Source: Rebecca billardiae RCC1528 (taxonomy: Eukaryota; Protista; Haptophyta). From it: a stretch of DNA of 64,000 bases. This document shows, piece by piece, positions 7,985-55,960 of the stretch. The notes under the pieces are model-generated. The model saw nothing but the letters and a program-made list of their open reading frames with translations, was not told the DNA's origin and did not search any database. A program made the translations under genes and the position numbers. The DNA lies in assembly GCA_965240325.2 (NCBI GenBank), contig OZ251223.1:4464001-4528000 (forward strand). The letters are read 5' to 3'. How positions within the stretch are numbered: position 1 is the first letter of the stretch; each line of letters opens with the position of its first letter.

Positions 7985-8104
7985 GCCTGGCGTGTTCATC
8001 AGTGTCACTGTGCGGCGCCGGGCGAAATCCGAATATTCAGAATCCGAGGGTTGGCGCGCCTTTCGGGAGGCGATCTCGTCTCCAGTCTTGACCGGCACTG
8101 GTAC

Positions 8105-10292: not shown

Positions 10293-10295
10293 CCA

Positions 10296-10444
10296 CTCAT
10301 TCTATGATTTAACGACACAGGTAGGACGGCGCAGGTCTCCTGATTCGTCGTCGGCAGTGCCCGATCGTCGACACGAAGTCGGCGCTGGTGGCAGAGCATA
10401 GCCTGAACCGCGATCGAATGGCTTGAGCGCGGCCTTGAGCTGCT
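10296..10444 (-). repeat. ~150-bp dispersed repeat, reverse complement of 60220-60369
   Basis: actcattctatgatttaacgacacaggtaggacggcgcagg...ggccttgagctgct matches the reverse complement of agcagctcaaggcc...gtgtcgttaaatcatagaatgagt. Confidence 0.9.
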
Positions 10445-20005: not shown

Positions 20006-20350
20006 GCGGGCGCGAGCGCCGGGGCGGCGGCGCCGAGGGCTCGCGCCGCCGGATGCCAGCCGCGCCGCCAGTGCCAGGCCGTCATCTTAGCGTCAGTCCG
20101 AGGGCCCGTTTCGAGCGCCTCGCCAGGGCCGGCAGCCCAGCGTCGGGCCGCCATGCCTCGGCTGAGACTGGATAGTGCTGACTGCTGATCAAGACCACCG
20201 TTGCTGGGCGGTGAAGCCGGCCGCCGACGAAAGCCGCCATCAAAGTTGCGTCGCACACACGAGTCACGACGCCACGCTGGCGGCTGGCTGGCCGCGCGCA
20301 GCCGTCACAGACACCAGCCAGCCAGCCGCGGCTGCCGCGCAATCAGCACG

Positions 20351-21212
20351 ATGCTCGCGCTGACGGCCGTCGCGCTCCTCGGCGGGTGCGCGGCGCGGGC
20401 GGAGCGCGCGACGCGCGCGGGCGCGCTGGCGCGAGCCCTCCGCCCGGCCCACCCACCCCCTCGCGCCCTTGCGCCCTCCCCTCCTGCCCCTTTGCAGCCT
20501 CGGCCCGCTGCAGGGCAAGCTCGCGCTCTCGCTGCGCGACCAGTCCTCGCTCTCCTCGCCGGGCAACGAGGCGACGCTCGAGCTGCGCCGCGGGTTCAGC
20601 TTCGGCAGCGACAAGCTGAGCGCGCTGCTGATCAAGTACACGCCCAAGTTCGACCGCGACGCGCGCGACAAGGTCGAGGTCACCGCCTCCGCCGCGATGC
20701 GCACGGCAGACGACGTGGTGCTCTCGGCAGAGGCGACCGTCAAGACGCCGGACAGCCGGTTCGAGGCGAAGGGCGCGGTGAAGACGCGCGGGTACACGCT
20801 GTCGGTCGAGCACGACTCGGCCGACTCTTCGGCGCTCAGCCTCGTCGAGGCCTCCAAGGGCCTCACGCTCGCGGGCAAGCCGTGCCGGCTGAACGCGGGC
20901 GTGAGGCTGGCGGGCGAGCCGGTCGTGCTCGCCAAGCTGCAGGTGGCGCTGGACGACGACCTGAAGGTGACGCCGATCGTGTCGTGCCGCCCGTCGGACA
21001 TGAAGTACGCGCTGGTCAAGCTCGAGGCGAACGGCGTGGCCAAGGGCGGCAACCTCGGCTGGAAGGCCGACCTCGTGCCCGCGCGCGCCGAGGCCTCGCT
21101 CGAGCTCAAGGAGGCGGTCGAGCACGGCGTGTGGGTGGTCAAGGCGACCGTGCCGACCGACGGCTCGGTGGGCGCGACCAGCCTCGCGCTCAGGCGCGAG
21201 ATCATCTGGTGA
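20351..21212 (+). CDS. Signal-peptide-bearing, beta-strand-rich protein (candidate beta-barrel/pore); intron 20386-20497
   Basis: Spliced start MLALTAVALLGG|LGPLQGKLALSL; alternating hydrophobic strands (KVEVTASA, VLSAEATV, YTLSVEH, LGWKADL, WVVKATV); terminal aromatic residue (...RREIIW*). Confidence 0.7.
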
Positions 21213-21811
21213 GGACGCGCGGCGCCGCGCGGCGAGGGGCGCGCGGCCGGCGGGCCACGCCGCGCGGGCGCACGCCGCCGCCACGAGCGCTGCCGCGGTG
21301 CCGCCGCGTGGGGCCGTGGGAGCACTGGCGCCACTCTGCTCTGAAGTCTGAGAGCCCGCGGAGAAGGGAGCCTGGTTACCGGATGCCGATGCCATGCGCC
21401 CGTAGTCTAAGCGGAATGGACGGGCGCCGCCCGGCAGAAGTGGCCGCGCGGCGACGCGGCGGGCGTGCCCCGGGGCCCTGAGGCCTGAGCCGATCTTGCT
21501 GTCGTCGGGGCGGTGCACGCGTCTGTCCTGTTAGCAGAGGGGAGACTATGAGTATGGCGATCGAATCGTCGCGGCACGGCGAGAGGCGGGCGGCCCTTGA
21601 AAGACGCGACCGGTCATCGCTCCCGGTGAAAGTTCAGCACCGGACCCTTTTTTGAACTGGCTGCATCGGCAACTCGGCATGCGCATTGCGCCGCGAAGAC
21701 GGTTGGCCTCGACCCAGTAGCGAAAAGGCGAGTCGACGACGACGGGCGACCAACGTTCGCCCACTTCAACTTGCCCCGCGCACGCCGCCCCGCCGACGAG
21801 ACGAAGAGACG

Positions 21812-24800: not shown

Positions 24801-26209
24801 TGGCGGAGGCGTCCGCGCGCACGCTGGGCGCGCAGCTCGCGCGCGAGCAGGACGACGGCGCCGCGTGCGCGCAGCTGTACGCGCTCAAGGTGCGGCGCGC
24901 GCGCCGCCCAGCGCGCAGCGCGCGCGCACCGCGGCCTCGCCCGCGCTCACGCCGCGCGCCTCCTGCCCCCTGCTGTGTGCGTGCGCAGGAGATCGTGCTG
25001 GGCGCGCACGGCTGCGGCGCGCACGGCGTGGGCCTGGGCGCGGCCACGCTCAACGGCTGCGTGCTCGAGCCCGCGCGCGCGGTGCTGCGGCGCAGCGCGG
25101 TGGTCCGGACGCTCGCCACCACCGCCAAGCAGCTCGGCGCCGCCGCCGCCGCCAAGGCCGCCGGCGCGTCCGCGTCCGCCGCCGCCGCGGCGGGCGCCTC
25201 CGCCGAGCTGCTCGGCGCGGAGGCGGAGGGCGCGGGCGCGCTGGACGAGGGCGCGCTCGGCGTGCTGGAGGAGGCCGCGGAGCTCGTGTGCGCGCTGCTG
25301 CGCTGCCACGGGCTGGACGGGCTGGCGTGCGCGGAGGGCGTGCTGCTGCCCGCGCTCGTCTCTCTGCTCTCCGCCGACGACGCCGCCGTGCGCGCGGACG
25401 GCGGCGCGGCGCGTCTGCGCGCGGTGGGCGCGTGCGTGGTGCGCGCGCTGCTCGAGGGCTGCGCGCCGCACCACGCGGCCCTTGGCGCGGCGCCGGCGCC
25501 GAGCGGCGCGGGCGCGGCGCCGCGCGCCGCGCCGCTCGGCGCGGAGCACGCCGCGTCCAAGTACGTGCACGCCGCGCTGCCCGCGCTGCTCGCGATGGCG
25601 GCGCCGCCCGAGCGCCACGCCGCCGCGGCGCACGCCGACGCCGCCGCCGCCGCGCTGCGCGCGCTGGGCGCGGCCGCGGAGCGCGGCGGCAAGCTGCTCA
25701 CCAACAAGGCGTGCGCGCAGGGCGCGGCGGCGGCGCTGGGCTGGCTGCAGCGGCCGGGCGCGTTCGACCGCACCTGCCACGCCGCGTGCTCCGCCGCGAC
25801 GCTCGCGCTCGGCTCGCTGCTCGCGTGCCGCGGCCGCGCGCTGCCCGAGAGCGGCGGCGCGCTGCTCGAGTTTGGGCGCGCGCTGCCGCAGCTGCGCGCG
25901 CTGGAGGACGTGCCGTGCGGCGCGCGGCTGCTGTGCGCGCTGGCGGAGGGCGAGGAGGCGGGGCGCGCGCTGGCGGGCGCGCTCGAGGCGCAGGGCGACG
26001 CGCTGCTGCCGTGCCTCCTCGCCGCGCTCGCGCGCACGCTCGGCGCGTGCGCGGCGGACGACGCGCCCCTGTGCGCGCGCGCGGGCGCGCTCGCCAAGCG
26101 GCTCGCCGACGGCGCGGGCTCGGAGCGGCTGGCCGCGCTCGCGGCCGCGGGCGCGCTCAGCGCCGAGCAGCAGCAGCTGCTCGCCACCGCCGTCGCCGCG
26201 GCCAACTGA
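21812..26209 (+). CDS. IPO5: Importin-beta family karyopherin (importin-5/Pse1-like HEAT-repeat protein); introns 21974-22112, 22782-23017, 24363-24506, 24890-24988
   Basis: IBN_N-like 'LHPDNAVRRAAELEFN...LVRTSCAVLARR', 'AVRRKVCDAVA', 'HPRVRWAALDALG', 'EAKQAALCAL'; canonical splice sites restore the frame. Confidence 0.8.
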
Positions 26210-34307: not shown

Positions 34308-36676
34308 ATGGCGAGCGAGCGCCAGGGCGTGATGGGCGTGCGCGACACGGACCCCGCGAGAGCGTCACTTCCGCCCATCAAGGCGCCGGCGGTGACGCCG
34401 CCGGGCTCAGTGCCGGGCTCCGCCCAGTTGCGTGCGACCGAGAGCGCGTTGAGCGTCGAGCCGCTCTCCCTCCGCAGCAGCATGGGTGCGGCCGAGCCGG
34501 GCGCCAAGCCGCCCGCGCGCTTCGAGCGCGGCTTCACGGTCGTGCGCACCACCGACGAGCCGGCCGAGCACGGCTCGGCCGACGGCAAGGCGCTGTCGGA
34601 GATGGACCGCAAGCGCGCGGCGCTGATGCTCAAGCGCAGCAAGGTGATCTCCGAGCTGGCCAACGTGGACCTGGCGGAGGTCGCCAAGCTGCTGCGCGCG
34701 ATCGACTTCGACTCGGGCACGGTGGTGGTGCGCGAGGGCGACTGGGGCAACTGCTGCTACATCGTCGACGTGGGCGAGCTCGACGTCTTCCTCGGCGCGG
34801 GCGCGGGCGCCACCAAGAACCCGACCGGCAAGATCTCGCCGGGCGAGCTGTTTGGCGAGCTGGGCGCGCTGTACGAGTGCAGGCGCACGGCGACCGTGGT
34901 GGCGCGCACCAAGGTGCGCGCGTGGAAGCTGCGCCACGCCGACCTCACGCGCGTGATCCGCGCGGACGCCGTGCTCAACCGGCGCGCCATCTTCGAGATG
35001 CTGCGCGAGGCGCCCTCCTTCCAGTCGCTCGACGAGAAGGCCGTCTCGAAGATTGCGGACGCGTGCGAGCACGCAAACTTCCCGTCGGGCGCCAACATCG
35101 TCGCCGAGGGGCAGGAGGGCGACGCGATGTACATCGTGAAGGCGGGGACCGTGCTCGTGACGCAGGACAAGGGCAAGGAGCAGAAGCCCGGCGTCGTCTC
35201 GGGCGCGCCCGTCTCGCGCGCGTCCAAGCGCTCGGTGCTGTGCCGCGTGATCGGCGCGGGCGGCTACTTTGGCGAGCGCGCGCTCATCACCAACGAGCCG
35301 CGCACCGCCACCGTGCAGGCGGCGAGCGACGTGGAGTGCCTGGTGATCAAGCGCGACCGCTTCCAGCAGATGCTCGGCCCGTACCACCGCTTCTTCAAGG
35401 AGCAGATGCACGCGATCGTCGAGGCGGACGCGGCCGCGGAGGCGGCGGAGGCGGGCGGCGGCCGCGGATCGGGCGGCGAGGCGGGGCTGTCGCGCGCGGC
35501 CGCGCTCGCCGCGCTCGCGCCGCCGTACAAGGAGCTCAAGGTGCTCAAGCCGCTCGGCGTGGGCACCTTCGCCGCGGTGGCGCTGGTCGAGCACGCGCGC
35601 ACGCAGCGGCTCTACGCGCTCAAGATGGTCTCGCGCGTCGCCGTCAAGAAGGGCGTGGACGAGCAGCGGCTGCTCAACGAGCGCGAGGCGATGCTGGCCG
35701 CGCAGCCGCACCCGTGCGTGCTCGGGCTGCACGGCACCTACCAGGACCCGCACACGTACTACCTGCTGCTCGAGCCGTGCATCGGCGGCGAGCTGTACTC
35801 GCTCATCCGCGAGGCGGGCGCGCTGCAGCCGCCGCACGCGCGCTTCTACGCCGCCGCCGCCGCGCTCGCGCTGCAGCGCGTGCACCAGTGCTCGCACGTG
35901 TTCCGCGACCTCAAGCCGGAGAACCTGATGCTGGACGCGCAGGGCTACCCGCGCCTGTGCGACTTTGGGCTGGCGAAGCGGCTGGACGGCGAGGCGCGCG
36001 CGTACTCGTCGGTGGGCACGCTCGAGTACATGGCGCCCGAGGTGAGCGCGCCCCGCCCCGCGCGCCGCGCCGCGCCGTGCCGCCGCTGACGCGCCCCGCC
36101 CCCGCCCCCCTCTCCTGTGTGTGTCTCCTGCGTGTGCGCTCGTTGGTGTGTGCGCTCGTTGGTGCGCAGGTGCTGCGCCGCACGGGGCACACGACGGCCG
36201 CAGACTGGTGGTCGTTCGGCGTGCTCATCTTCGAGATGCTCGTCGGGCGCACGCCCTTCGTCGCCAAGCCGGCGCAGCGCACCGAGAGCGAGGCGGACGC
36301 GATGGCGCTGATGACCGACATCCTCGCGGGCAACGTGCGCTGGCCCGAGCGCCACGAGCCGCAGCTCGACGGCAGCGCGCGCGACCTGGTGAGCCGGCTG
36401 CTGCGGCCAGACGTGACGGAGCGGCTCGGCCACGGCGGCGCGGGCGTGGCCGACATCATCGAGCACCCGTGGTTCGCGGGCTTCGACTTCCGCTCCATCC
36501 CGATGCGCACGAGCGTGCCGCCGTACCGGCCCGAGCTCTCCGGGCCGACCGACACGTCGTGGTTCAGCGTGGACGTCGCCGACTTTGCGCGCAAGATCAA
36601 GACAGACAAAGGCTCGCCGGAAGGGCGCGCGCGCCGCTCGTCGACGCTCAACTCGTCGCAGATCCGCCCGTGGTGA
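34308..36676 (+). CDS. cGMP-dependent protein kinase-like (2 cNMP domains + AGC kinase); intron 36042-36169
   Basis: Phosphate-binding cassettes 'FGELGALYECRRTATV' and 'FGERALITNEPRTATV' (Thr favours cGMP); kinase motifs 'LGVGTF', 'ALK', 'RDLKPEN', 'DFG', 'GTLEYMAPE|V', 'DWWSFG', AGC tail 'PPYRP....TDTSWF'. Confidence 0.92.
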
Positions 36677-37604
36677 CCGGCCGGCCGCGTGCCGCCGTCC
36701 TGGTGCTCGCCCACCGGCGCCGCAGCCCGCAGCATCACAGCATCCTTGTCGAGGCGCACCACTTTGATGACCGTGGTCCGTGCACGACGTGGTCACATAT
36801 GGCTTATTGGCGGCGGTGACCGGATCACGCCGCGCCTGCGCGCCGCCTGATTACGACTGCTGACGCCGCCTTAAGTTTGTCCCGTGTCGCATGCAATGTT
36901 GTTGAGCGCAGTGTATATATATATATAGTTATTGTTCGTCGACTACTCGTCTGCTATATCGATTATTATAATTCCGGGCGGATGCAGCGCGCAAAATGCA
37001 TATACACATATGCTGGGCATGCGCTGCCTGCGTGGCCAGGCCAAGATGCTCATCGCCCGCGCGCGCATGGCGCACGTGCGCCCGGGGGCACGCGCCCGCG
37101 GGGGCGCTGCATACGACGACTACTTCGAGACGACGGCTGACGACGCGTGGCACCGCGACCACCGCGGTGGCGCGTGCGCGTCGACGCCAGACGGTGCGTC
37201 GAGCTTCCGCTCGGCGATGGAGTGATGGGCGACTATGAGGGGGGGGGGACGACGGCGAGGAGCGCTGATCCTGGTGTTTGTCTCTGCTGCTCGATCTGCT
37301 GCTACAGCTTGCTGACTCTGACGCCTGCCCGTTGCATACCACGTCGTTAATGGCGGGCCGTAGGTCCGCCCCTTGTAGTGCCCGGGAAAAAGATAAGAAA
37401 AAGAAAAAGAAAAAAGAAAATCGCCTCGCAGAGAAAAGAAAATCGCCTCGCTCACTGCCAGGTCGCTTCGCTCACTACCGGGCGCCCTCGCAGCTCCCAC
37501 TGGGGACGCTCGGCCGAAAACCATCTGCGGCCTGGCGCGGAGCGCGTGGGCGGCGCGCGCCAAATCCAACGCTAGCGCGGACATCGTGAGGGGATTCCCG
37601 AACG

Positions 37605-39275
37605 GTGTTTTCGCCCGATTCGCGATTGCTGCCCTCGTCGTCTCGCGTGCAGGTCGAACGGGGGCTAAATCGACGCGTTGGAGCGGTACGCTCGGCGCGT
37701 CGACACGATCGTGCGACCTGGGGCGATCCTCGCCCGACGTGCACGTCGAGCGCTCGCACGGGCCATAGCATCATGCGCTGCGCAAGACAACCACCTCGCA
37801 CGATCCACCGTCGCGCGTCGGGCTCGGTGCGGAAACGCATTCATCACGAGGCGTCTCGCGGGCGGGAAGCGCCATCGCACGCGACGCAAGCTTTGGCGCG
37901 GCCTTCTGAACACCATAACCGGAATGCACACACCGGACTGTCGTCGCGTGACCCGGTTGGCAAGGTCGGGCGCATGCAAATCCGTTTGCTACGGTCGGTG
38001 GTGTTCCAGAGCGAGCGATCATCTTTCATCTTTCACGCTCGCGAGCTCGCGGCCAAGGATCGCTTGGCGCTCGAGGACCCACGTCCGGCCTGCATGGCGT
38101 CGACGGTGGCCAATGCGACGGAGGGGCAGCGCGAAGCGGCGTACGACGCGCACCGCACGCACCTGCCGGGTCTGCCGCCGTGGCAGGAACCGCGTCTTCG
38201 CGAGTCGGCGACTGAGGCGACAGCGCGCTATCACCGATCCCAGGGGCGCATTCGCGACGAGCTGAAACGTCGCGCGTGCAAGATCGCCGCACCATCCTTG
38301 CCCATGGCACGGGCGCTGCGGGACGAGGCCGACGTCGTGAAGCCAGTGGCACATGCGCTGCGCTTCGTGTGCCTGCTCGAGCAGCGCGTGCCCACCGTCG
38401 ATCGCGAGTGGCACACGCTCTCGCACTGCGCGCGCGTACACCGCCAACAGCTCCTGATACCGCCGCACGTGCGAGTGCCGGACCTGTCGCGCGGAGCGGC
38501 GAGCGCCGACGAGCGCTTGGACCTGGACGCGCTGTTGCGCAGCGTGGCGGCCGTGCACGACGCCGACGCGACCTTCGCCGAGCCCATCGTGCCCGGAGCG
38601 GACATTGGCATCCTGGCGACACACGATCTCAGCTGGCGACACGAGGAGATGCTCACGATCTCCTCTGGCGGATTCGTCGGCGGCGAGGCGCTCGACTACG
38701 TCATCGCGGTCGAGATGCGGCACATGCAGCGCGTACGCGAGCTCGCGCGAAGCCACGGGCTGCCCGTCCCGCCCCGCGTGCTGCACGTTCCCTCGTGGGT
38801 GTGGACCTTGCTCATGGGCGCGGGCGTGTACGCGTGGGAGAAGGTGGCCGACATCTTTGCGCTCTTCGACCTGAACGAGTACGACGTGCTCTCCTTCATC
38901 ATCAACCAGGACGGCAACCACTGGGCGCAGGGGGTCGTCGACTTGCGGCGCGAGATCATCGAGTACCGCGAGCCCCTGGGCGGAGGCGACATGATCGGCT
39001 TCGTTTCGAACGTGCAGCTGCTGCTCGCCGACGCGCAAGAGACAGAGAGACAGAAATCGGTAGGATGCACTGAACATCACACTCCGGCCGCCACAACTTG
39101 AACTGTTTTCGTGTTTAGCTCCAAGGACAAACCGTCACCGTCAGGCGCACACGGGCACGCCGCCGTCGCACGCCAATCAGTTGGCAGTGCGTGCGCGCAG
39201 TCGCCAAGGCTCGGCACGATGACGAGTAGCATCACAGTGGGTGCAGGAATACACGCGCAATCACACTGTCGCTGA
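37605..39275 (+). pseudogene. Ulp1/C48 SUMO-protease-like ORF in unit 1, interrupted by an in-frame TGA at 39099-39101
   Basis: 'GGFVGGEALDYVI', 'LSFIINQDGNHWAQGVVDLRREIIEYREPLG'; after the TGA the same frame reads 'TVFVF...ARQSVGSAC', matching Q-x5-C oxyanion/catalytic spacing. Confidence 0.65.
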
Positions 39276-39731
39276 GCTCGCACCAGAGTCATCTGTCGCG
39301 TTATTATTCGTCAGTGAGTCGGGTAGCTCACAATCATCTCGGTATGATGTCGCATTGTTATTCGTAGTCATCCTGCCCGTCAAACCGCTATAAATAAAAG
39401 GCGCGAACCCGCTGGGGAAATATTGCGACAGCACTGGCACGGCCCGCCGACCCCCCCGCCCGCCAGGGCTGAGTTTATGGCGGGCCGTAGGTCCGCCCCT
39501 TGTAGTGCCCGGGAAAAAGATAAGAAAAAGAAAAAGAAAAAAGAAAATCGCCTCGCAGAGAAAAGAAAATCGCCTCGCTCACTGCCAGGTCGCTTCGCTC
39601 ACTACCGGGCGCCCTCGCAGCTCCCACTGGGGACGCTCGGCCGAAAACCATCTGCGGCCTGGCGCGGAGCGCGTGGGCGGCGCGCGCCAAATCCAACGCT
39701 AGCGCGGACATCGTGAGGGGATTCCCGAACG

Positions 39732-41402
39732 GTGTTTTCGCCCGATTCGCGATTGCTGCCCTCGTCGTCTCGCGTGCAGGTCGAACGGGGGCTAAATCGA
39801 CGCGTTGGAGCGGTACGCTCGGCGCGTCGACACGATCGTGCGACCTGGGGCGATCCTCGCCCGACGTGCACGTCGAGCGCTCGCACGGGCCATAGCATCA
39901 TGCGCTGCGCAAGACAACCACCTCGCACGATCCACCGTCGCGCGTCGGGCTCGGTGCGGAAACGCATTCATCACGAGGCGTCTCGCGGGCGGGAAGCGCC
40001 ATCGCACGCGACGCAAGCTTTGGCGCGGCCTTCTGAACACCATAACCGGAATGCACACACCGGACTGTCGTCGCGTGACCCGGTTGGCAAGGTCGGGCGC
40101 ATGCAAATCCGTTTGCTACGGTCGGTGGTGTTCCAGAGCGAGCGATCATCTTTCATCTTTCACGCTCGCGAGCTCGCGGCCAAGGATCGCTTGGCGCTCG
40201 AGGACCCACGTCCGGCCTGCATGGCGTCGACGGTGGCCAATGCGACGGAGGGGCAGCGCGAAGCGGCGTACGACGCGCACCGCACGCACCTGCCGGGTCT
40301 GCCGCCGTGGCAGGAACCGCGTCTTCGCGAGTCGGCGACTGAGGCGACAGCGCGCTATCACCGATCCCAGGGGCGCATTCGCGACGAGCTGAAACGTCGC
40401 GCGTGCAAGATCGCCGCACCATCCTTGCCCATGGCACGGGCGCTGCGGGACGAGGCCGACGTCGTGAAGCCAGTGGCACATGCGCTGCGCTTCGTGTGCC
40501 TGCTCGAGCAGCGCGTGCCCACCGTCGATCGCGAGTGGCACACGCTCTCGCACTGCGCGCGCGTACACCGCCAACAGCTCCTGATACCGCCGCACGTGCG
40601 AGTGCCGGACCTGTCGCGCGGAGCGGCGAGCGCCGACGAGCGCTTGGACCTGGACGCGCTGTTGCGCAGCGTGGCGGCCGTGCACGACGCCGACGCGACC
40701 TTCGCCGAGCCCATCGTGCCCGGAGCGGACATTGGCATCCTGGCGACACACGATCTCAGCTGGCGACACGAGGAGATGCTCACGATCTCCTCTGGCGGAT
40801 TCGTCGGCGGCGAGGCGCTCGACTACGTCATCGCGGTCGAGATGCGGCACATGCAGCGCGTACGCGAGCTCGCGCGAAGCCACGGGCTGCCCGTCCCGCC
40901 CCGCGTGCTGCACGTTCCCTCGTGGGTGTGGACCTTGCTCATGGGCGCGGGCGTGTACGCGTGGGAGAAGGTGGCCGACATCTTTGCGCTCTTCGACCTG
41001 AACGAGTACGACGTGCTCTCCTTCATCATCAACCAGGACGGCAACCACTGGGCGCAGGGGGTCGTCGACTTGCGGCGCGAGATCATCGAGTACCGCGAGC
41101 CCCTGGGCGGAGGCGACATGATCGGCTTCGTTTCGAACGTGCAGCTGCTGCTCGCCGACGCGCAAGAGACAGAGAGACAGAAATCGGTAGGATGCACTGA
41201 ACATCACACTCCGGCCGCCACAACTTGAACTGTTTTCGTGTTTAGCTCCAAGGACAAACCGTCACCGTCAGGCGCACACGGGCACGCCGCCGTCGCACGC
41301 CAATCAGTTGGCAGTGCGTGCGCGCAGTCGCCAAGGCTCGGCACGATGACGAGTAGCATCACAGTGGGTGCAGGAATACACGCGCAATCACACTGTCGCT
41401 GA
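39732..41402 (+). pseudogene. Ulp1/C48 protease-like ORF, unit 2 (same translation as unit 1)
   Basis: Same sequence offset by 2127 bp. Confidence 0.65.
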
Positions 41403-41858
41403 GCTCGCACCAGAGTCATCTGTCGCGTTATTATTCGTCAGTGAGTCGGGTAGCTCACAATCATCTCGGTATGATGTCGCATTGTTATTCGTAGTCATCC
41501 TGCCCGTCAAACCGCTATAAATAAAAGGCGCGAACCCGCTGGGGAAATATTGCGACAGCACTGGCACGGCCCGCCGACCCCCCCGCCCGCCAGGGCTGAG
41601 TTTATGGCGGGCCGTAGGTCCGCCCCTTGTAGTGCCCGGGAAAAAGATAAGAAAAAGAAAAAGAAAAAAGAAAATCGCCTCGCAGAGAAAAGAAAATCGC
41701 CTCGCTCACTGCCAGGTCGCTTCGCTCACTACCGGGCGCCCTCGCAGCTCCCACTGGGGACGCTCGGCCGAAAACCATCTGCGGCCTGGCGCGGAGCGCG
41801 TGGGCGGCGCGCGCCAAATCCAACGCTAGCGCGGACATCGTGAGGGGATTCCCGAACG

Positions 41859-43529
41859 GTGTTTTCGCCCGATTCGCGATTGCTGCCCTCGTCGTCTCGC
41901 GTGCAGGTCGAACGGGGGCTAAATCGACGCGTTGGAGCGGTACGCTCGGCGCGTCGACACGATCGTGCGACCTGGGGCGATCCTCGCCCGACGTGCACGT
42001 CGAGCGCTCGCACGGGCCATAGCATCATGCGCTGCGCAAGACAACCACCTCGCACGATCCACCGTCGCGCGTCGGGCTCGGTGCGGAAACGCATTCATCA
42101 CGAGGCGTCTCGCGGGCGGGAAGCGCCATCGCACGCGACGCAAGCTTTGGCGCGGCCTTCTGAACACCATAACCGGAATGCACACACCGGACTGTCGTCG
42201 CGTGACCCGGTTGGCAAGGTCGGGCGCATGCAAATCCGTTTGCTACGGTCGGTGGTGTTCCAGAGCGAGCGATCATCTTTCATCTTTCACGCTCGCGAGC
42301 TCGCGGCCAAGGATCGCTTGGCGCTCGAGGACCCACGTCCGGCCTGCATGGCGTCGACGGTGGCCAATGCGACGGAGGGGCAGCGCGAAGCGGCGTACGA
42401 CGCGCACCGCACGCACCTGCCGGGTCTGCCGCCGTGGCAGGAACCGCGTCTTCGCGAGTCGGCGACTGAGGCGACAGCGCGCTATCACCGATCCCAGGGG
42501 CGCATTCGCGACGAGCTGAAACGTCGCGCGTGCAAGATCGCCGCACCATCCTTGCCCATGGCACGGGCGCTGCGGGACGAGGCCGACGTCGTGAAGCCAG
42601 TGGCACATGCGCTGCGCTTCGTGTGCCTGCTCGAGCAGCGCGTGCCCACCGTCGATCGCGAGTGGCACACGCTCTCGCACTGCGCGCGCGTACACCGCCA
42701 ACAGCTCCTGATACCGCCGCACGTGCGAGTGCCGGACCTGTCGCGCGGAGCGGCGAGCGCCGACGAGCGCTTGGACCTGGACGCGCTGTTGCGCAGCGTG
42801 GCGGCCGTGCACGACGCCGACGCGACCTTCGCCGAGCCCATCGTGCCCGGAGCGGACATTGGCATCCTGGCGACACACGATCTCAGCTGGCGACACGAGG
42901 AGATGCTCACGATCTCCTCTGGCGGATTCGTCGGCGGCGAGGCGCTCGACTACGTCATCGCGGTCGAGATGCGGCACATGCAGCGCGTACGCGAGCTCGC
43001 GCGAAGCCACGGGCTGCCCGTCCCGCCCCGCGTGCTGCACGTTCCCTCGTGGGTGTGGACCTTGCTCATGGGCGCGGGCGTGTACGCGTGGGAGAAGGTG
43101 GCCGACATCTTTGCGCTCTTCGACCTGAACGAGTACGACGTGCTCTCCTTCATCATCAACCAGGACGGCAACCACTGGGCGCAGGGGGTCGTCGACTTGC
43201 GGCGCGAGATCATCGAGTACCGCGAGCCCCTGGGCGGAGGCGACATGATCGGCTTCGTTTCGAACGTGCAGCTGCTGCTCGCCGACGCGCAAGAGACAGA
43301 GAGACAGAAATCGGTAGGATGCACTGAACATCACACTCCGGCCGCCACAACTTGAACTGTTTTCGTGTTTAGCTCCAAGGACAAACCGTCACCGTCAGGC
43401 GCACACGGGCACGCCGCCGTCGCACGCCAATCAGTTGGCAGTGCGTGCGCGCAGTCGCCAAGGCTCGGCACGATGACGAGTAGCATCACAGTGGGTGCAG
43501 GAATACACGCGCAATCACACTGTCGCTGA
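41859..43529 (+). pseudogene. Ulp1/C48 protease-like ORF, unit 3 (same translation as unit 1)
   Basis: Same sequence offset by 4254 bp. Confidence 0.65.
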
Positions 43530-43741
43530 GCTCGCACCAGAGTCATCTGTCGCGTTATTATTCGTCAGTGAGTCGGGTAGCTCACAATCATCTCGGTATG
43601 ATGTCGCATTGTTATTCGTAGTCATCCTGCCCGTCAAACCGCTATAAATAAAAGGCGCGAACCCGCTGGGGAAATATTGCGACAGCACTGGCACGGCCCG
43701 CCGACCCCCCCGCCCGCCAGGGCTGAGTTTATATATATGTG

Positions 43742-51170: not shown

Positions 51171-52725
51171 TAAACTGTGCCCTGGCGGGCGGGGGGGTCG
51201 GCGGGCCGTGCCAGTGCTGTCGCAATGTATCCTCTGCGGGTTCGCGTCTTTCCACAGCATTCGCTCGTGGCCGTGGGTGACGGACAGTCCGAGGACCAGT
51301 GACACCTGTGACCTGAAGTTCCCCGGCCACGTGCACACGTGACAGTGTCGACGTGACACGTCTCGGTGCGCATCAGGCAAGGCCCGCACACCCACGAGGG
51401 AATGTGCAGCACGCGGGGCGGGGCGGGTAGCCCGTTGCTCCGCGCGAGCGCGGGTACGCGCTGTATGTGCCGCATCTCGACCGCGATGGCGTAATCGAGC
51501 GCCTCGCCGCCGACGAAGCCGCCAGAGTAGATCGTGTGCATGTCCTCCTGCCGCCAGCCGAGAGCGGTCGTCGCGAAGACGCTTGCCGATGTCCGCTCCG
51601 GGCATGATGGACTCGGCGCAGGTCGCGTTGACATCGTACACTGCCGCCACGCTGAGCACGAGCGCGTTGACGTTCACGCGGTCGTCGCTCTTCGCCTTTT
51701 CGACAGGTCTGGCGCCCGCGTGTTCGGGCGGCACGAGGAGCTGTTGGTTGTGCGCGCGCGCGCGCACAGCGACAGCGTGTGCCACTCGCGATCGAGAGTG
51801 GGCACGAGCTGCTCACGCAGGCACATGAATCGCAGCGCATCCGTCACCGGCGTGACGACTTCCGCCTCGTCCCGCAGCGCCTGCGCCATGGACGAGGATG
51901 GCGCGGCGATGTGGCATGCTCGACGTTTCATCTCTCTGCGGATGGCATCACGGGCTTGTCTGGGTCGCCAACTCGCGAAGACGCGGTTGCTGCCACGGCG
52001 ATAGACCCGGGAGGTGCGTCCGCTGCGCGTCGTACGCCGTTGGCGCTGCGCTTCCGTCGCATTGGTCACCGTCGACGCCATGCAGGCCGGACGTGGGCTT
52101 CGAGGGACCGCGAGCGACGACTGAGTCCGGTGCGCGGATTCCGGCGATCGAGTTCAGAAGGCCGCGCCAAATCTTGCCTCGCGTGCGATGGCGCTTCGAA
52201 CCCGCCCGCGAGACACCTCGTGATGAATGCGTTTCCGCACCGAGCCCGACGCGCGGCGGTGGATCGTGCGAGGCGGCCATCGTGCGCAGCGCTTGCTTCT
52301 ATGGCCCGTGCGAGCGCTCGCCGTGCAAGTCGGGCGAGGATCGTCCCAGGTCGCACGATCGTGTCGACGCGCCGAGCGTACCTCCAAACGCGTCGACTTT
52401 GGCCCCCGTTCGACCTGCACGCGAGACGACGAGGGCAGCAATCGCGAATCGGGCGAAAAAGCCGTTCGGGAATCCCCGCGCGATGTCCGCGCCGGCGTTG
52501 GATTTGGCGCGCGCGGCCCACGCGCTCCGCGCCAGGCCGCAGATGGTTTTCGGCCGAGCGTCCCCAGTGGGAGCTGCGAGGGCGCCCGGTAGTGAGCGAG
52601 GCGATTTTCTTTTCTTGGCGAGGCGATTTTCGTCTTTTTCCTTTTCTTTGTCTTATCTTTTTCCCGGGCACTACAAGGGGCGGACCTACGGCCCGCCATA
52701 CGGCCCGCCATATACGGCCCGCCAT
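51171..52725 (-). mobile_element. Diverged, internally deleted, inverted copy of the 2127-bp element
   Basis: Same 5' region (A-rich tract, ...RFRTEPDARRWIVRGG) and 3' end (gcactggcacggcccgccgacccccccgcccgccaggg) on the minus strand; frameshifted Ulp1 N-part 'SGGFVGGEALDYAIAVEMRH'. Confidence 0.85.
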
Positions 52726-52777
52726 ATATGCTGTAATAGCAACGGCCCGCCCGCGCGACGTGACGCCGCGCGTGCCG

Positions 52778-55700
52778 TCAGCCGCCAGCGGCACCCCGCC
52801 GCGGGCGCTCGCACACGTAGTGCTCGACGGCCGTGCTGCACGGGCGCGCGAGCCAGCCGCCGCCGTCCATCACAGCGCAGTACGCGTCCGCGCTGAACAC
52901 GGGGAACAGCACGCCGCCGCGCGTCTCGGGCTGGCCCGGCGCCCAGTGGGCGTACGCGCGCGCGCCGAGCGCGCGCGCCGGCTCGGCTGCCTGCCCCGCG
53001 TCGCCGAGCGCGTCCGCGCCGCGCAGCCACGCGCTCCCGTTGGCCGCGTCCACGCCCTGCGGCGCCACCAGGTCGATCCACACGCCGCGCATGGCGCGCG
53101 CGCCGACCAGGCAGCCCAGCCGCGCCTCCTGCGCGGCCGAGGCGGGCAGCGCCAGCCGCGCGCCCAGCCGCGCGCACGCGCTCGCCGCGTGCGCGTGGTG
53201 CACCGGCCCCAGCTGCCCCCCCGCCGCGTGGCCGCTGCCGCCTCTGCCGCTGCCGCCTCTGCCGCTGTGGCCTCTGCCGCTGTGGACGCTGTTGGAGAAG
53301 AGATACTCGGAGGGGCCCTCGGGCGGGGACAGCCAGCCGCCGCCCACGTGCGCCAGCTGCGCGTTCGACGCGGCGCACGCGTCGCACGCCGCGCGCGCGG
53401 GCTGCACGTGCTCGTGCCGCACGTAGAGCGCCACGGCTGCCAGCAGGCAGAGCCACGCGCACGCCCACGGGCCCCACGCGAGCAGCAGCGTGCGCAGCCC
53501 CACCAGCGCGCGCGCGCGCGGCGTGTCCGCGGTGCTCGCGCGCGCCAGCACGGCCGCGTCCGCACCGCGCCAGCCGGGGCTGCCGGGCGGGCGCGGCCGC
53601 GTGCTGCTGCTACTGGCTGGCGACTCGGCCGCGGCCGAGCGCTCGGCCAGCTCGACCGCGCCGCCGCCGCCGCCGCCGCCGAGCGCGTGCTGCCGCTGCG
53701 CGTGCTCGGCCGCCGTGTACTTTGCGCACCCCCTGAGCAGCGCGCGCACGCGGCGGTTGAAGTTGGGCAGGGTGCCGCACGCCGCCTCGACGCAGCCGAG
53801 CAGACGGTCGTAGTCGGTGCGCAGCCGGCACTGCGCGCGCACCGCGTCGAACTCCGCGAGCTCGGAGGGCTCGAGCCCGGGCAGCAGCATCATGCTCACA
53901 GACTCGAGCCCCAGCCCGCCCATCAGCGCGCGGTCCACGGTCGAGGGCATCGCGCCCCGGCCCAGCGCGGCGCGGGGCCGAGCGGACGAGGCGGCCAGGC
54001 TGGGCGGCGGCACAAACGGCGTGACGGGCGTCGGCTGCAGCCCCTCCGCGGCGGCCGCGACCGCGCGCTCGGCGGCGGGCGACTCGGTGGACGCGCGCCC
54101 CGTGGCGCCGCGCCGGCCTGCTCGCGCGCCGAGCACCGCGCTGGGCGGCTCCTCCGCCTCGTCCTCCTCCTCCTCCTCCTCCATCTCCACGGCCCCGCGC
54201 ATCTGCTCAAACGTGAAGAGCTCGACCACGCTGAGGGGGGGGAGCGCAGGGGCAGGGGCAGGGGCGCGGCCAGAGGCGCGCGTCTGAGCGCCGCATGCGT
54301 GGCGTGCGCGCGGCCCCGGCCCGGGGCGGGGTGCCCTGCACTGCCCTGCACGCAGCGCACGCAGCGCACACTGCAGCGCGCAGTGCAGTACGCACCACCA
54401 CAGCCGCTCGAGGTAGGTCGGCCCCGCGAGGATGAGCAGCTCCCGGCTGGCTGCCAGATAGAAGGGCAGCAGCGGCAGGTCCGTCTCGACGTCGCCCTGG
54501 TCGATGCACGCGCGGTCTGAGGCGCGCGCAAGGGGCGGCGGCGCGCGCCCAACGCGCGTGAGGTGGCCTCCCTCCGCGCGTGCGCGTGCGCGCGGCCGGC
54601 TGGGCCGCACCAATCCAGAGCAGCGGCTCTCGCGCCGAGTTGAGCGACTTGAAGCGGCGGCGCCACGCCTGCAGCGCCTCCCACTTGTGCTCGGGCGGGT
54701 CGTGCCACCTGCGCGGCGCGTGGCGAGCGCGCGAGGCGGGCGCGCGCATGAGCGCGGTCGGCGCGTGCCGCGCGGTCGCACGGCCGCGCGCGCTGCTGGG
54801 CGCGCGGCTGCGCGCGGCTGCGCGCACGAGTGCGAGACGAACGCGTCGATGTCGTCGACGTGCACGGGGACGGAGCGCTCGAACCACGCGTTCGCGCCCA
54901 CCGCGTCCGTCGCGTTCGTCTCGAAGAGCGCGCGCGTGAGCAGGTCGCACCGGATGGCGCGCAGCCGCTTGCGCCCGCTCGCGATCGCGCTCGCCGGGTC
55001 GGCGCCGCCCACGAGCGAGGCGATGCCCGCCGCGGTGGCGAGGCCGGTGCCGCCGGTGGCGAGGCGCTCGCGCGCGCGCAGCCGCACCGCGGGCGTGAGC
55101 ATGAGCACGCCCAGCGCCGCCCACACCACCCCCGTCGCCGCCATCAGCGGGAACACCGGGTCGGTGCCGAAGCCGACCGTGAGCGCGGCCGGCACAATGT
55201 CGACGCCGAGCGCGAGCGCCGCGCCGAGCACGTGCAGCCCGTGCGTGCGCCAGATGCGGTCGACGTGCCGGCGCGTGTCGAGCGGCTCGAGCCAGCGCGG
55301 CCCGGCCGCGCCCGCCGGCCCGCGCCGCGCGCCCACCACCCAGCGCGCCAGGCCGACGGCGAACGAGCTGCCGGTGACGAGCGCGATCGAGGCGGTCGCC
55401 AGGTTGCTCAGCGCGACGTACACGCGCGGCGAGCCGAGGCACGTGCCCGCGCCGCTCGCGCGCAGCTGCGCGACGGCGATGCGGACGAAGAGGCTGACGT
55501 ACACGCACTCGAACAGCGCAAAGATCGCCGCCGCCGCCGCCGCCGCGGGCCCGTTGGTCGTGGGCAGCGCAAACAGGATGAGCGGGTACGAGCCCACCGC
55601 CACGATCAGCCCGACCCAGTAGAGGCGGTCGGCGTCATCCCACGCGGACGCGGCGATGAGCGTGCCGGACGCGATGAGCACCAGCCCGCTCGCCAGCGGC

Positions 55701-55960
55701 AGCACCGTCGTGCGCATCGTGTACCGCCGGCCCTGGCGCCGCGCGGCCGCCAGCAGGCCCGTCACGCGCTCCGCCGACATCTGCCGCCGACGGCCGGCGA
55801 CGGAGCTCAGCCGCCGCCGGCTGGGCGTGTGGCCGGCGGCATGCAGCTCGGGCACGCGATCGGCCGCCCCGGCGTCCTCGTCGCCCAGGCGCTCGTGCGC
55901 GCCGTGCGGCGGTAAGCTGGGGTGGACGCGCGCAGCCCCCGCGCCTGGAGGGCGGGCCAT
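52778..55960 (-). CDS. Receptor-like protein: ~6 TM helices + TIR-like domain + TM + C-type lectin-like domain; introns 54709-54827, 54517-54610, 54231-54395
   Basis: Spliced TIR-like core 'DAFVSHS|WHD..HKWEAL..W...LWI|DRACIDQ...LPFYLAASRELLILAGPTYLERLW|CVVELFTF'; TM 'LLLAWGPWACAWLCLLAAVALYV'; CTLD 'ACARLGARLALP...VWIDL...YAHWAPGQP...YCAVM.GGWLARPC....YVCE'. Confidence 0.82.
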   Translation of the reverse strand: MARPPGAGAARVHPSLPPHGAHERLGDEDAGAADRVPELHAAGHTPSRRRLSSVAGRRRQMSAERVTGLLAAARRQGRRYTMRTTVLPLASGLVLIASGTLIAASAWDDADRLYWVGLIVAVGSYPLILFALPTTNGPAAAAAAAIFALFECVYVSLFVRIAVAQLRASGAGTCLGSPRVYVALSNLATASIALVTGSSFAVGLARWVVGARRGPAGAAGPRWLEPLDTRRHVDRIWRTHGLHVLGAALALGVDIVPAALTVGFGTDPVFPLMAATGVVWAALGVLMLTPAVRLRARERLATGGTGLATAAGIASLVGGADPASAIASGRKRLRAIRCDLLTRALFETNATDAVGANAWFERSVPVHVDDIDAFVSHSCAQPRAAARPAARAAVRPRGTRRPRSCARPPRALATRRAGGTTRPSTSGRRCRRGAAASSRSTRRESRCSGLVRPSRPRARARAEGGHLTRVGRAPPPLARASDRACIDQGDVETDLPLLPFYLAASRELLILAGPTYLERLWWCVLHCALQCALRALRAGQCRAPRPGPGPRARHACGAQTRASGRAPAPAPALPPLSVVELFTFEQMRGAVEMEEEEEEDEAEEPPSAVLGARAGRRGATGRASTESPAAERAVAAAAEGLQPTPVTPFVPPPSLAASSARPRAALGRGAMPSTVDRALMGGLGLESVSMMLLPGLEPSELAEFDAVRAQCRLRTDYDRLLGCVEAACGTLPNFNRRVRALLRGCAKYTAAEHAQRQHALGGGGGGGAVELAERSAAAESPASSSSTRPRPPGSPGWRGADAAVLARASTADTPRARALVGLRTLLLAWGPWACAWLCLLAAVALYVRHEHVQPARAACDACAASNAQLAHVGGGWLSPPEGPSEYLFSNSVHSGRGHSGRGGSGRGGSGHAAGGQLGPVHHAHAASACARLGARLALPASAAQEARLGCLVGARAMRGVWIDLVAPQGVDAANGSAWLRGADALGDAGQAAEPARALGARAYAHWAPGQPETRGGVLFPVFSADAYCAVMDGGGWLARPCSTAVEHYVCERPRRGAAGG

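What the first reader, a model, noticed from the sequence alone, without database searches (positions are those of the whole stretch)
52778..55960. Candidate algal innate-immune receptor: multi-TM / TIR / TM / C-type lectin in one polypeptide
Seen: after removing three canonical introns, one frame encodes about six N-terminal TM helices, a TIR-like core (FVSHSW, WIDxxCIDQ, TYLERLWCVVEL), an acidic/low-complexity linker, a seventh TM and a C-terminal C-type lectin-like domain. Known: the W-C-x-x-E-L Glu is the catalytic residue of NAD+-cleaving TIR domains (SARM1, plant TNLs, Thoeris), and CTLDs are extracellular pattern-recognition modules in animals. Inference: an even number of TMs before the TIR and one after it puts the TIR in the cytosol and the lectin outside. 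That would be a glycan-sensing NADase receptor with inverted topology relative to Toll-like receptors; I do not know of this architecture being described. The lectin has QPE and WLA in place of EPN/QPD and WND, so its ligand may be non-canonical.
Basis: partly seen in the sequence, partly recalled or inferred. Interest (0 to 1): 0.85.

Follow-up and report, generated by a model that had tools for sequence, protein, structure and literature searches.

The report
Algal multi-pass TIR–lectin receptor gene
An intact four-exon gene in a very GC-rich, probably haptophyte, alga encodes a seven-span membrane protein with a TIR-like signalling domain inside the cell and a C-type-lectin-like domain outside, and it belongs to a large, unstudied family of receptor-like proteins in marine protists that carry lectin or leucine-rich-repeat ectodomains.

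Summary
On the minus strand of 52778-55960, three GT-AG introns (119, 94 and 165 nt) give a 934-aa protein. Its order is six TM helices, a TIR/HET-superfamily domain split by an acidic loop, a seventh TM, and a C-type lectin-like domain (CTLD). The splice junctions align without gaps to intron-less transcript contigs of relatives. The TIR C-terminal part, TM7 and the CTLD lie in one exon with GC3 of about 0.95, so this is one gene.

An AlphaFold model of the closest full-length homologue's central domain matches only TIR domains at the top of a PDB search. The window protein keeps all 11 invariant family residues, including the helix-C W446xxxE450 motif. A model of the window's own C-terminus matches 256 CTLD structures. 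Charge distribution puts the TIR in the cytosol and the CTLD outside.

The gene belongs to a family of hundreds of proteins from haptophytes and stramenopiles, built as a 6-TM module plus a TIR-like domain. Ectodomains vary: C-terminal CTLD in this clade, N-terminal CTLD, or N-terminal LRR.

NADase activity, an immune role and the ligand remain inferred. The canonical Ca2+/sugar site is missing, so glycan sensing is doubtful. This is a new variant of a known kind, with a partial precedent in G. huxleyi.

The parts
52778..55960 (-). Whole gene: ATG at 55960, TGA at 52780-52778, four exons, 934 codons
54828..55960 (-). Exon 1. Encodes the Arg-rich cytosolic N-tail, the six TM helices, the juxtamembrane helix and the start of the TIR-like domain (through ...DAFVSHS).
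   Evidence: GC3 0.95-1.0. Aligns to homologues.
55085..55711 (-). Conserved 6-TM module (aa 84-292). No known relatives outside this family.
   Evidence: Hydropathy. Module HMM found in 76 of 152 representative hits, 64 of 80 metagenome loci and 103 of 110 proteins. No Pfam match and no meaningful PDB match.
54709..54827 (-). Intron 1 (119 nt, GTGCGC...CAG)
   Evidence: Junction is gapless against transcript homologues.
54611..54708 (-). Exon 2 (W375 to I406 region). Lies in a different frame from the long ORF.
54517..54610 (-). Intron 2 (94 nt, GTGCGG...CAG)
54396..54516 (-). Exon 3 (DRACIDQ ... TYLERLW)
54231..54395 (-). Intron 3 (165 nt, GTGCGT...CAG)
52778..54230 (-). Exon 4. One continuous exon that carries the end of helix C, the acidic insert, the C-terminal half of the TIR-like domain, TM7, the CTLD and the stop.
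   Evidence: GC3 0.88-1.0 throughout. This excludes a split into two genes by splicing.
53723..54868 (-). TIR/HET-superfamily domain, aa ~365-620. The range includes the three introns and the insert.
   Evidence: Alignment A1, Pfam census, AF2 model of homologue, Foldseek, residue check.
54221..54223 (-). Codon GAG for E450, the invariant Glu of the helix-C W446-C-V-V-E450 motif and the putative catalytic residue
53903..54196 (-). Acidic, low-complexity insertion (aa 463-560) in the loop between helix C and strand D
   Evidence: Variable in length among homologues.
53420..53491 (-). Seventh TM helix (aa 698-721), oriented in to out
52808..53386 (-). C-type lectin-like domain (aa 733-925). Has four canonical Cys and the WIxL motif. 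QPE and WLA replace EPN/QPD and WND.
53231..53282 (-). 15-nt tandem repeat (3.5 copies) encoding a Gly/Ser/Arg-rich insert inside the CTLD
   Evidence: Window-specific insert in the alignment. pLDDT below 50 in the model.

Best explanation
Shown. This is an intact nuclear gene for a 934-aa, seven-span membrane protein. The N-tail, the 6-TM module ends and the TIR/HET-like domain face the cytosol. The seventh TM helix carries the chain out, so the C-terminal CTLD is exposed outside the cell or in a lumen, as in a type II lectin receptor. The gene belongs to a large protist family built as a 6-TM module plus a TIR-like domain, with interchangeable ectodomains.

Inferred. It works as a surface receptor. 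A ligand, probably not a classical Ca2+-bound sugar, binds the CTLD and clusters the receptor. Clustering brings the TIR-like domains together. Their W446xxxE450 site then cleaves NAD+, either producing a cyclic ADP-ribose-type signal or depleting NAD+. This starts a defence or cell-death response to viruses, bacteria or other non-self.
For: Gene model.

Family. 564 relatives were found. Full-length relatives P0002, P0005, P0006 and P0151 have the same domain order, with Lectin_C above Pfam's cut-off. They lie on 2-3 kb single-ORF contigs of transcript type.

TIR fold. The AF2 model of P0151:298-483 has pLDDT 93.7. That segment is 57-58% identical to the window domain. The top 43 PDB Foldseek hits are TIR domains only, including RUN1, RPS4, SNC1, RPP1, L6, AbTir, ThsB, SPARTA and TLR10. 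The top hit in the viral library is a TIR/WD40 protein. 31 of 81 family members hit Pfam TIR_2, the best at E 1.1e-6.

Catalytic motif. The Glu is invariant in 81 sequences and nearly invariant in 76 more. It is present in the window as E450, along with the other ten invariant residues. It lies on the helix after the third strand. It aligns to the WCxYEL motif of a TLR TIR. The literature describes the helix-C WxxxE Glu as the catalytic residue (bioRxiv 10.64898/2026.04.20.719644; 10.1101/2023.05.19.541320).

CTLD. The AF2 model of the window's own sequence has pLDDT 75.7. It gives 256 Foldseek hits at E<=1e-3, led by DC-SIGNR, LOX-1, CD23, ASGPR, Mincle and Dectin-1, with target-normalised TM-scores of 0.7-0.79.

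Topology. K+R counts are 19 in the predicted inside loops and 6 in the outside loops. N-terminal-CTLD relatives carry a signal peptide and one extra TM before the same 6-TM module.

Receptor logic. Lectin_C was the only partner domain at E<=1e-4 among 76 metagenome ORFs. The CTLD is N-terminal in the other half of the tree. P0141 has plant-type LRRs before the same module.

Precedent. Membrane TIR genes respond to virus in G. huxleyi (PMC12489294).
Against: - No enzymatic, expression or binding data exist for this gene or any family member.
- The domain passes neither the Pfam TIR nor the HET cut-off.
- Foldseek TM-scores are only 0.45-0.58, and the C-terminal half is more helical than a textbook TIR.
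- The TIR model was built on a homologue, because the spliced window protein could not be submitted by reference.
- Many TLR-type TIRs also carry this Glu, and it is debated whether they are enzymes.
- The CTLD lacks the canonical Ca2+/sugar ligands.
- The conserved 6-TM module has no role in this model.
- The neighbouring genes are ordinary, with no immune cluster.
- PADLOC defence models barely match.
Confidence: 0.5

Rival explanations
1. Same architecture, but the TIR-like domain is a non-catalytic scaffold, as classically assumed for TLR and IL-1R TIRs. Ligand-driven clustering would recruit unknown cytosolic adaptors through homotypic contacts, with no NAD+ chemistry.
For: The best sequence-level PDB match is a TLR TIR (E 0.11). 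TLRs share the WCxxE motif. Foldseek TM-scores to catalytic TIRs are moderate.
Against: The Glu and Trp are invariant across hundreds of divergent members. That is the pattern of a catalytic site rather than an interface. The nearest structural matches are catalytic plant and bacterial TIRs. No TIR adaptor candidate was seen.
Confidence: 0.15
2. A HET-like cell-death or self/non-self (allorecognition, mating or kin recognition) module rather than a pathogen sensor. The CTLD would recognise surfaces of the same species, and the HET/TIR-like domain would trigger incompatibility death, as in filamentous fungi.
For: 53 of 81 members give weak Pfam HET hits centred on the WIDxxCI(D/N)Q block. UniRef names the E. 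huxleyi member 'Heterokaryon incompa...'. HET is a TIR relative sufficient for cell death (PMC10197012, PMC9153377).
Against: HET hits stay below the cut-off and cover only about 19 of 146 profile positions. HET proteins are cytosolic and fungal. LRR and CTLD ectodomains are typical of microbe sensing. No polymorphism data were examined.
Confidence: 0.15
3. A non-immune membrane protein. The 6-TM module would be the working part (channel, transporter or trafficking receptor, for example for scale or cell-surface material or nutrient sensing). The CTLD and TIR-like domains would only regulate or localise it.
For: The 6-TM module is the most constant feature of the family and is unexplained. Some members carry EF-hands instead of an ectodomain. 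The CTLD lacks a sugar site. The genomic neighbours are housekeeping and signalling genes.
Against: The module has no similarity to any known channel or transporter. The invariant residues concentrate in the TIR-like domain. The ectodomain types are those of pattern-recognition receptors.
Confidence: 0.15
4. Annotation artefact. The long ORF would be a by-product of 75% GC content, or two adjacent genes (a TM-TIR gene and a TM-CTLD gene) wrongly read as one.
For: GC-rich DNA gives many long spurious ORFs on both strands here. No transcript data exist for this locus. The exact protein was not found in the protein collection.
Against: Frame-specific GC3 of 0.93-1.0 runs along the whole model and nowhere else. 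The TIR C-terminal half, TM7 and the CTLD share one exon. Independent transcript contigs of relatives encode the same order in one ORF. All invariant residues are intact.
Confidence: 0.03

Closest known systems
Catalytic TIR domains of plant TNLs (RUN1, RPS4, RPP1, L6), bacterial AbTir, ThsB and SPARTA, and SARM1
   Same: Predicted fold: these are the top Foldseek hits. Shared features are the strand-A hydrophobic-Ser motif, helix-C WxxxE with an invariant Glu, and a likely need for self-association.
   Different: Below the Pfam TIR/TIR_2 cut-offs. Has a WIDxxCIDQ block typical of HET. The C-terminal half is more helical. A long insert follows helix C. The domain is tethered between membrane spans rather than being soluble or N-terminal to an NB-ARC.
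Fungal HET domain (PF06985)
   Same: The three-block motif pattern: hydrophobic-S-x-x-W, WIDxxCI(D/N)Q, and R-x-W-x-x-E-L. Weak Pfam hits occur in 53 of 81 members. Both are remote TIR relatives with a conserved Glu.
   Different: Not fungal. Membrane-embedded. Scores below the cut-off and confined to one block. No NLR or allorecognition context.
Animal Toll-like receptors
   Same: The logic of an extracellular recognition domain plus a cytosolic TIR. Family member P0141 even has LRRs outside.
   Different: Seven membrane spans instead of one. The window protein has a CTLD, not LRRs. The domain order is reversed, with TIR before the ectodomain. There is no evidence of MyD88-type adaptors.
Animal type II C-type lectin receptors (Dectin-1, DC-SIGN, LOX-1, CD23, ASGPR)
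   Same: The TM7-plus-CTLD half has their orientation: N-terminus inside, C-terminal CTLD outside. The CTLD fold matches them best.
   Different: The cytoplasmic 'tail' is a whole TIR-like domain plus a 6-TM module instead of an ITAM or internalisation motif. The Ca2+/sugar site is not conserved.
Virus-responsive membrane TIR genes of Gephyrocapsa (Emiliania) huxleyi (PMC12489294)
   Same: Haptophyte TIR proteins with an extracellular region or multiple N-terminal TM helices followed by a TIR with the conserved Glu. An E. huxleyi protein belongs to the present family.
   Different: That paper reports no added domains. I could not check whether its genes are the same family, because the supplement is not held. 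The C-terminal TM plus CTLD extension is not described there.

Membership tests
TIR domain superfamily (Pfam TIR PF01582 / TIR_2 PF13676) | Profile match above Pfam's gathering score | tested here: not met
   The window ORF and exon pieces give no TIR hit at E<=10. Exons are short and the spliced protein could not be submitted. The closest full-length homologues give none. 31 of 81 family domains give sub- or near-threshold TIR_2 hits, the best at E 1.1e-6. P0131 scores 18.5 bits against a cut-off of 28.
TIR domain superfamily | Flavodoxin-like alpha/beta TIR fold | tested here: met
   AF2 model of homologue P0151:298-483, pLDDT 93.7. The PDB Foldseek top 43 are all TIR domains, with probability mostly 0.9-1.0 (three lower, down to 0.47) and TM-scores 0.45-0.58. 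The BFVD top hit is TIR/WD40. The model is of a 57-58% identical homologue, not the window protein itself.
Catalytic (NAD+-cleaving) TIRs | Conserved Glu on helix C, in a WxxxE motif | tested here: met
   W98 and E102 are invariant in A1. They correspond to window W446 and E450. They sit on the helix after strand 3. They align to a TLR WCQYEL motif.
Catalytic (NAD+-cleaving) TIRs | NAD+ hydrolase or cyclase activity that depends on that Glu | not testable with these tools
   Needs a biochemical assay.
Fungal HET domain (PF06985) | Profile match above the gathering score over the whole domain | tested here: not met
   The score shown is 17.2 bits (P0151; best E 0.0014 over all members) against a cut-off of 22.5; the two hits shown (P0003, P0151) cover profile positions 45-63 of 146.
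C-type lectin-like domain (PF00059) | Profile match above the gathering score | tested here: inconclusive
   The window piece scores 20.8 bits against a cut-off of 22.6, E 6.9e-4. Subfamily homologues pass: P0006 51.1, P0025 33.1, P0001 30.6, P0103 48.4 bits.
C-type lectin-like domain | CTLD fold with two canonical disulfides and a WIGL-type core | tested here: met
   AF2 of the window's own sequence. 256 Foldseek hits at E<=1e-3, the top of the list being CTLDs. Four canonical Cys and W of WIxL are invariant in A2.
Ca2+-dependent carbohydrate-binding C-type lectins | EPN or QPD motif plus WND (Ca2+ site 2 ligands) | tested here: not met
   QPE and WLA occupy the aligned positions. Only P0002 in the subfamily keeps QPD and WHD.
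Toll-like receptors | N-terminal LRR ectodomain, a single TM and a C-terminal TIR | tested here: not met
   The window protein has no LRR and seven TMs, and its TIR precedes the ectodomain. A family relative, P0141, does have LRRs followed by TM segments and the TIR-like domain.
6-TM + TIR-like protist family (defined here) | Conserved 6-TM module, juxtamembrane AAAGIA(A/S)L helix, and a TIR-like domain with 11 invariant residues | tested here: met
   The window groups with the ten members that have a TM after the TIR, SH-aLRT 83-93.

The most novel reading that the evidence does not exclude
Haptophytes and stramenopiles would possess their own class of cell-surface pattern-recognition receptors. 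A swappable ectodomain (CTLD at either end, or LRR) would be wired through a conserved six-span module directly to a catalytic TIR/HET-like domain. Ligand binding outside would then be converted, without adaptors, into NAD+-derived nucleotide signals or NAD+ collapse inside. The six-span module would be an integral transducer or effector, for example a channel. This would be a third, independent solution to TIR-based surface immunity alongside animal TLRs and plant TIR-NLRs. It would also be a living intermediate between TIR and fungal HET domains.
Probability: 0.3. Interest if true: 0.85.

Novelty: new variant of a known kind. Interest (0 to 1): 0.7.

Why it matters
Immunity in marine microalgae, which shapes bloom collapse by viruses, is almost unknown at the molecular level. 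This gene gives a concrete, testable receptor candidate. It has a recognisable sensing domain outside and a TIR-like domain with an intact catalytic motif inside, all in one polypeptide, so one protein could link recognition to NAD+-based signalling.

The family around it has hundreds of members, with lectin or LRR ectodomains at either end. This suggests modular receptor evolution parallel to animals and plants. Its domain sits between TIR and fungal HET, so it may help show what HET domains do.

If the function proves ordinary, for example adhesion or trafficking, the finding still defines an unannotated domain family and a conserved six-span module that current databases miss.

Tried and rejected
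- The word-indexed protein search with the unspliced ORF found nothing. Alanine-, glycine- and arginine-rich words probably swamped the candidates. The exhaustive HMMER search worked.
- The spliced protein has no reference, so it could not be sent to Pfam, PDB, AF2 or the remote searches. I used exon pieces, homologues with protein ids, and local phmmer, hmmsearch, blast and mafft on the spliced sequence.
- Rfam on the window found nothing.
- There are no paralogues in the window.
- The viral-contig scan found no relatives.
- PADLOC gave 3 weak hits among 81 members.
- The 6-TM module against PDB sequences gave only hydrophobic noise.
- I tried to name the organism by exact look-up of ten neighbouring ORFs. 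One was found and it had no name.
- The supplement of PMC12489294 is not held.
- Literature searches found no CTLD-TIR fusion.
- The two-gene reading and the opposite-strand ORFs (for example 51779-54520 +) are rejected on GC3 and homology.
- A possible in-frame intron at the 15-nt repeat inside the CTLD is not supported. There is no GTGCG-type donor and GC3 stays at 0.9 or above. It is not excluded either.
Full report
**What is in the sequence**

The window is 71% GC overall and 75-77% GC around the finding. The minus strand of 52778-55960 holds a 1060-codon stop-free ORF. In DNA this GC-rich that alone means little, because both strands carry many long ORFs.

Three features make it a gene.

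- Third-codon-position GC is 0.93-1.00 in this frame from about 55900 down to 54830, and again from 54230 to 52781. It switches to another frame over 54820-54640 and collapses in two short stretches.
- Those irregular stretches are bounded by GTGCG...CAG. Removing 54827-54709 (119 nt), 54610-54517 (94 nt) and 54395-54231 (165 nt) gives a 2805-nt reading frame of 934 codons. Introns 1 and 2 shift the frame by 2 and 1, which explains why exon 2 is in a different frame from the long ORF.
- The spliced protein aligns without gaps across all three junctions to uninterrupted homologues.

**One gene or two**

Exon 4 (54230-52778) is a single continuous exon with coding-type GC3 throughout. It carries the end of helix C, the acidic insert, the C-terminal half of the central domain, the seventh hydrophobic helix, the lectin-like domain and the stop. 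Splicing cannot separate the two halves.

Relatives P0002 (833 aa), P0006 (732 aa), P0151 (896 aa) and the N-terminally truncated P0005 encode the same order in single ORFs. They lie on 2-3 kb contigs with short untranslated ends and no introns, from JGI samples and MMETSP, and so are transcript assemblies. I give the two-gene or artefact reading about 3%.

**Membrane spans and topology**

Hydropathy shows six segments between aa 84 and 292 and one at aa 698-721. The same six are present in P0151, P0006 and P0003.

Lys+Arg counts in the flanks are 5, 0, 7 and 7 for the N-tail, loop 2-3, loop 4-5 and the two flanks of the segment between TM6 and TM7. They are 1, 3, 0 and 2 for loops 1-2, 3-4, 5-6 and the stretch after TM7. 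That is 19 inside against 6 outside. This places both ends of the 6-TM module and the central domain in the cytosol, and the C-terminal domain outside.

Relatives from metagenomes give independent support. L051 begins with a signal peptide and a lectin domain, then has one TM helix, a basic stretch, the same six-span module and the same central domain. That arrangement only works if the module starts and ends in the cytosol.

I had no dedicated topology predictor, so this remains an inference.

**The central domain**

Pfam does not recognise it in the window pieces or in the nearest homologues. The only signal is a weak HET hit on the WIDxxCI(D/N)Q block.

I aligned 81 complete domains (A1). 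Scanned one by one, 53 give weak HET hits, 31 give TIR_2 hits (best E 1.1e-6), 6 give TIR hits and 2 give ThsB_TIR hits.

An AlphaFold model of P0151:298-483 made with A1 has mean pLDDT 93.7. That segment is 57-58% identical to the window domain. Against the PDB, the top 43 Foldseek matches are all TIR domains. They include plant RUN1, RPS4, SNC1, RPP1, L6 and Roq1, bacterial AbTir, PdTIR, BtpA and ThsB, SPARTA TIR-APAZ, and human TLR10 and TRAM. Probabilities are mostly 0.9-1.0, falling below that for three PdTIR/BtpA chains, and TM-scores are 0.45-0.58. Against viral models, the best match is a TIR/WD40 protein.

So the fold is TIR-like but divergent. It lies between Pfam's TIR and HET families, which the literature treats as remote relatives (PMC10197012, PMC9153377).

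Eleven columns are invariant in A1, and the window protein keeps all of them: F370, W375, D377, W405, D407, L423, P424, G438, R444, W446 and E450. W446 and E450 lie on the helix after the third strand. They form the helix-C WxxxE motif. Its Glu is described as the defining catalytic residue of NAD+-processing TIRs. A profile search of PDB sequences aligned this block to the WCQYEL motif of a TLR TIR, at a non-significant E of 0.11.

It is followed by strand D and two conserved helices, containing the blocks MLLPG, FD and FN.

**The C-terminal domain**

In isolation the window piece scores 20.8 bits against Lectin_C, with a cut-off of 22.6. It gives weak hits to surfactant protein D and mannose-binding protein. 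These align WAPGQPE to WAPGEPN and GGGWLARPC to NGKWNDKAC.

The subfamily alignment A2 shows the four canonical cysteines, the WI(G/D)L core and the W of the WxxGxP block as invariant or nearly so. It also shows an N-terminal DCxxC pair and one further conserved Cys.

An AlphaFold model of the window's own aa 725-934 has pLDDT 75.7, low only in the window-specific inserts. It matches 256 PDB chains at E<=1e-3. The list is led by DC-SIGNR, LOX-1, CD23, ASGPR, Mincle and Dectin-1, with target-normalised TM-scores of 0.7-0.79.

The fold is therefore a CTLD. Because these positions also vary among close relatives (only P0002 keeps QPD and WHD), I consider classical Ca2+-dependent sugar binding unlikely. 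The ligand is open.

**The family**

An exhaustive phmmer search gave 564 proteins at E<=1e-3. A scan of JGI metagenomes gave 235 further coding stretches. A word search from P0108 gave 114 proteins at E<=1e-10.

Most long members end a few residues after the central domain and have the six-span module in front of it.

The few with database names are all 'hypothetical' in NCBI:

- Diacronema lutheri KFE25_002610
- Pavlovales sp. CCMP2436 KAJ1621306.1
- Emiliania huxleyi EMIHUDRAFT_241984, which UniRef names 'Heterokaryon incompa...'
- Triparma strigata TrST_g6224, which UniRef names 'TIR domain-containing protein'

The family therefore spans haptophytes and at least one stramenopile.

The D. 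lutheri locus has 73% GC and short introns like the window. A pavlovophyte origin of the window is plausible but not shown.

**Ectodomain swapping**

Ten members, including the window gene, have an extra TM helix after the central domain. They form one group in trees built from the central domain alone, with SH-aLRT 83 and 93 and 0 of 500 label shuffles as clustered. In this group the C-terminal extension is a CTLD, sometimes shortened or unrecognisable.

In the other half of the tree the CTLD is N-terminal, behind a signal peptide:

- L051, L069, L071, L075, L080 and P0108 score above Pfam's cut-off.
- L053, L066 and L044 score just below it.
- 15 of 110 proteins in the P0108 set have it.

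P0141 has a signal peptide and plant-type LRRs (LRR_14 54 bits, LRR_8 48.6 bits) before a TM helix, the module and the TIR-like domain. P0228 has LRRs too, and a few members have EF-hands.

Among 76 metagenome ORFs, Lectin_C was the only partner domain at E<=1e-4. The CTLD is thus joined to the same core in both domain orders. Each order places the lectin outside and the TIR-like domain inside. I consider this the strongest argument that the two domains work together as a receptor.

**Mechanism and rivals**

Shown:

- the gene structure
- the domain folds
- the conserved motif
- the recurrence of the architecture

Inferred:

- the topology
- ligand-induced clustering
- NAD+ cleavage by the W446/E450 site
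- a defence or death output

I put about 0.5 on this receptor-NADase reading. The main rivals are about 0.15 each:

- a non-catalytic scaffold TIR
- a HET-like self/non-self death module
- a non-immune role centred on the unexplained six-span module

The module's conservation across all ectodomain types is the main observation that no explanation accounts for. It has no Pfam match and no meaningful PDB sequence match.

**Comparison with what is known**

The protein works like a hybrid of a type II C-type lectin receptor (the TM7-CTLD half) and a TIR receptor. It is not a TLR: it has no LRR, it has seven spans, and the domain order is reversed. It does not pass the Pfam membership thresholds for either TIR or HET.

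The closest published precedent is in Gephyrocapsa huxleyi. [quoted passage not shown] Three literature searches found no CTLD-TIR fusion. These searches cover only the open-access library.

**Verdict**

This is a new architectural variant of a known kind, a TIR-domain surface receptor, within a large unannotated protist family. Interest is 0.7. It is a well-defined and directly testable candidate for algal surface immunity, with function still entirely inferred.

Noticed in passing
window 37350-43732 and 51172-52699: Three 100%-identical head-to-tail copies of a 2127-bp unit, GC 0.645, below the window mean. A fourth copy is reverse-oriented, 81-91% identical and partly deleted. It begins about 80 nt after the stop codon of the receptor gene. 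The unit's longest ORF (39732-41225 +) has a Ulp1/Peptidase_C48 hit just above Pfam's cut-off, so it may be transposon-derived.
   Followed up: partly
window 53231-53282: A 15-nt tandem repeat (3.5 copies) encodes a Gly/Ser/Arg-rich insert inside the CTLD that no homologue has. It is modelled with pLDDT below 50. It could be length-polymorphic. An unrecognised in-frame intron is less likely.
   Followed up: partly
window 52687-52728: A 14-nt tandem repeat (TACGGCCCGCCATA, about 3 copies) followed by an A-rich stretch lies directly 3' of the stop codon, at the edge of the diverged 2127-bp element.
   Followed up: no
P0141 (954 aa) and P0228, from public metagenome/transcriptome proteins: Family members with a signal peptide and plant-type leucine-rich repeats in front of a TM helix, the six-span module and the TIR-like domain. 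This is a TLR-like design built on the same core.
   Followed up: partly
L051:353-2908, L069:568-3648, L071, L075, L080, P0108: Relatives with the lectin domain at the N-terminus, in the order signal peptide-CTLD-TM-6TM-TIR-like. They lie in the other half of the family tree from the window gene. The CTLD has therefore been joined to this core in both orders.
   Followed up: yes
window 55085-55711 and homologues: The six-span module has conserved motifs: L(R/P)PT(D/N) after TM2, a Cys in loop 3-4, and R.LLD..W before TM5. A juxtamembrane AAAGIA(A/S)L helix follows it. None of this has a recognisable relative in Pfam or among PDB sequences.
   Followed up: partly
L003 (Diacronema lutheri JAGTXO010000010.1) 10001-12593: The D. 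lutheri paralogue KFE25_002610 has a single 412-nt intron inside the Trp codon of its IWLD block. That is four nucleotides from the position of intron 2 of the window gene (WI|D). The positions are near but not identical.
   Followed up: no
window 2339-5104 (-) and 34308-36086 (+): Two genes with cyclic-nucleotide-binding domains, one fused to a protein kinase. The other neighbours are ArfGAP-C2, importin, SDR, MFS, F-box and KH genes. There is no immune-gene cluster around the receptor.
   Followed up: no
window 6001-8000 and 18001-26000: Stretches with 82-86% GC, well above the window mean. Not examined.
   Followed up: no
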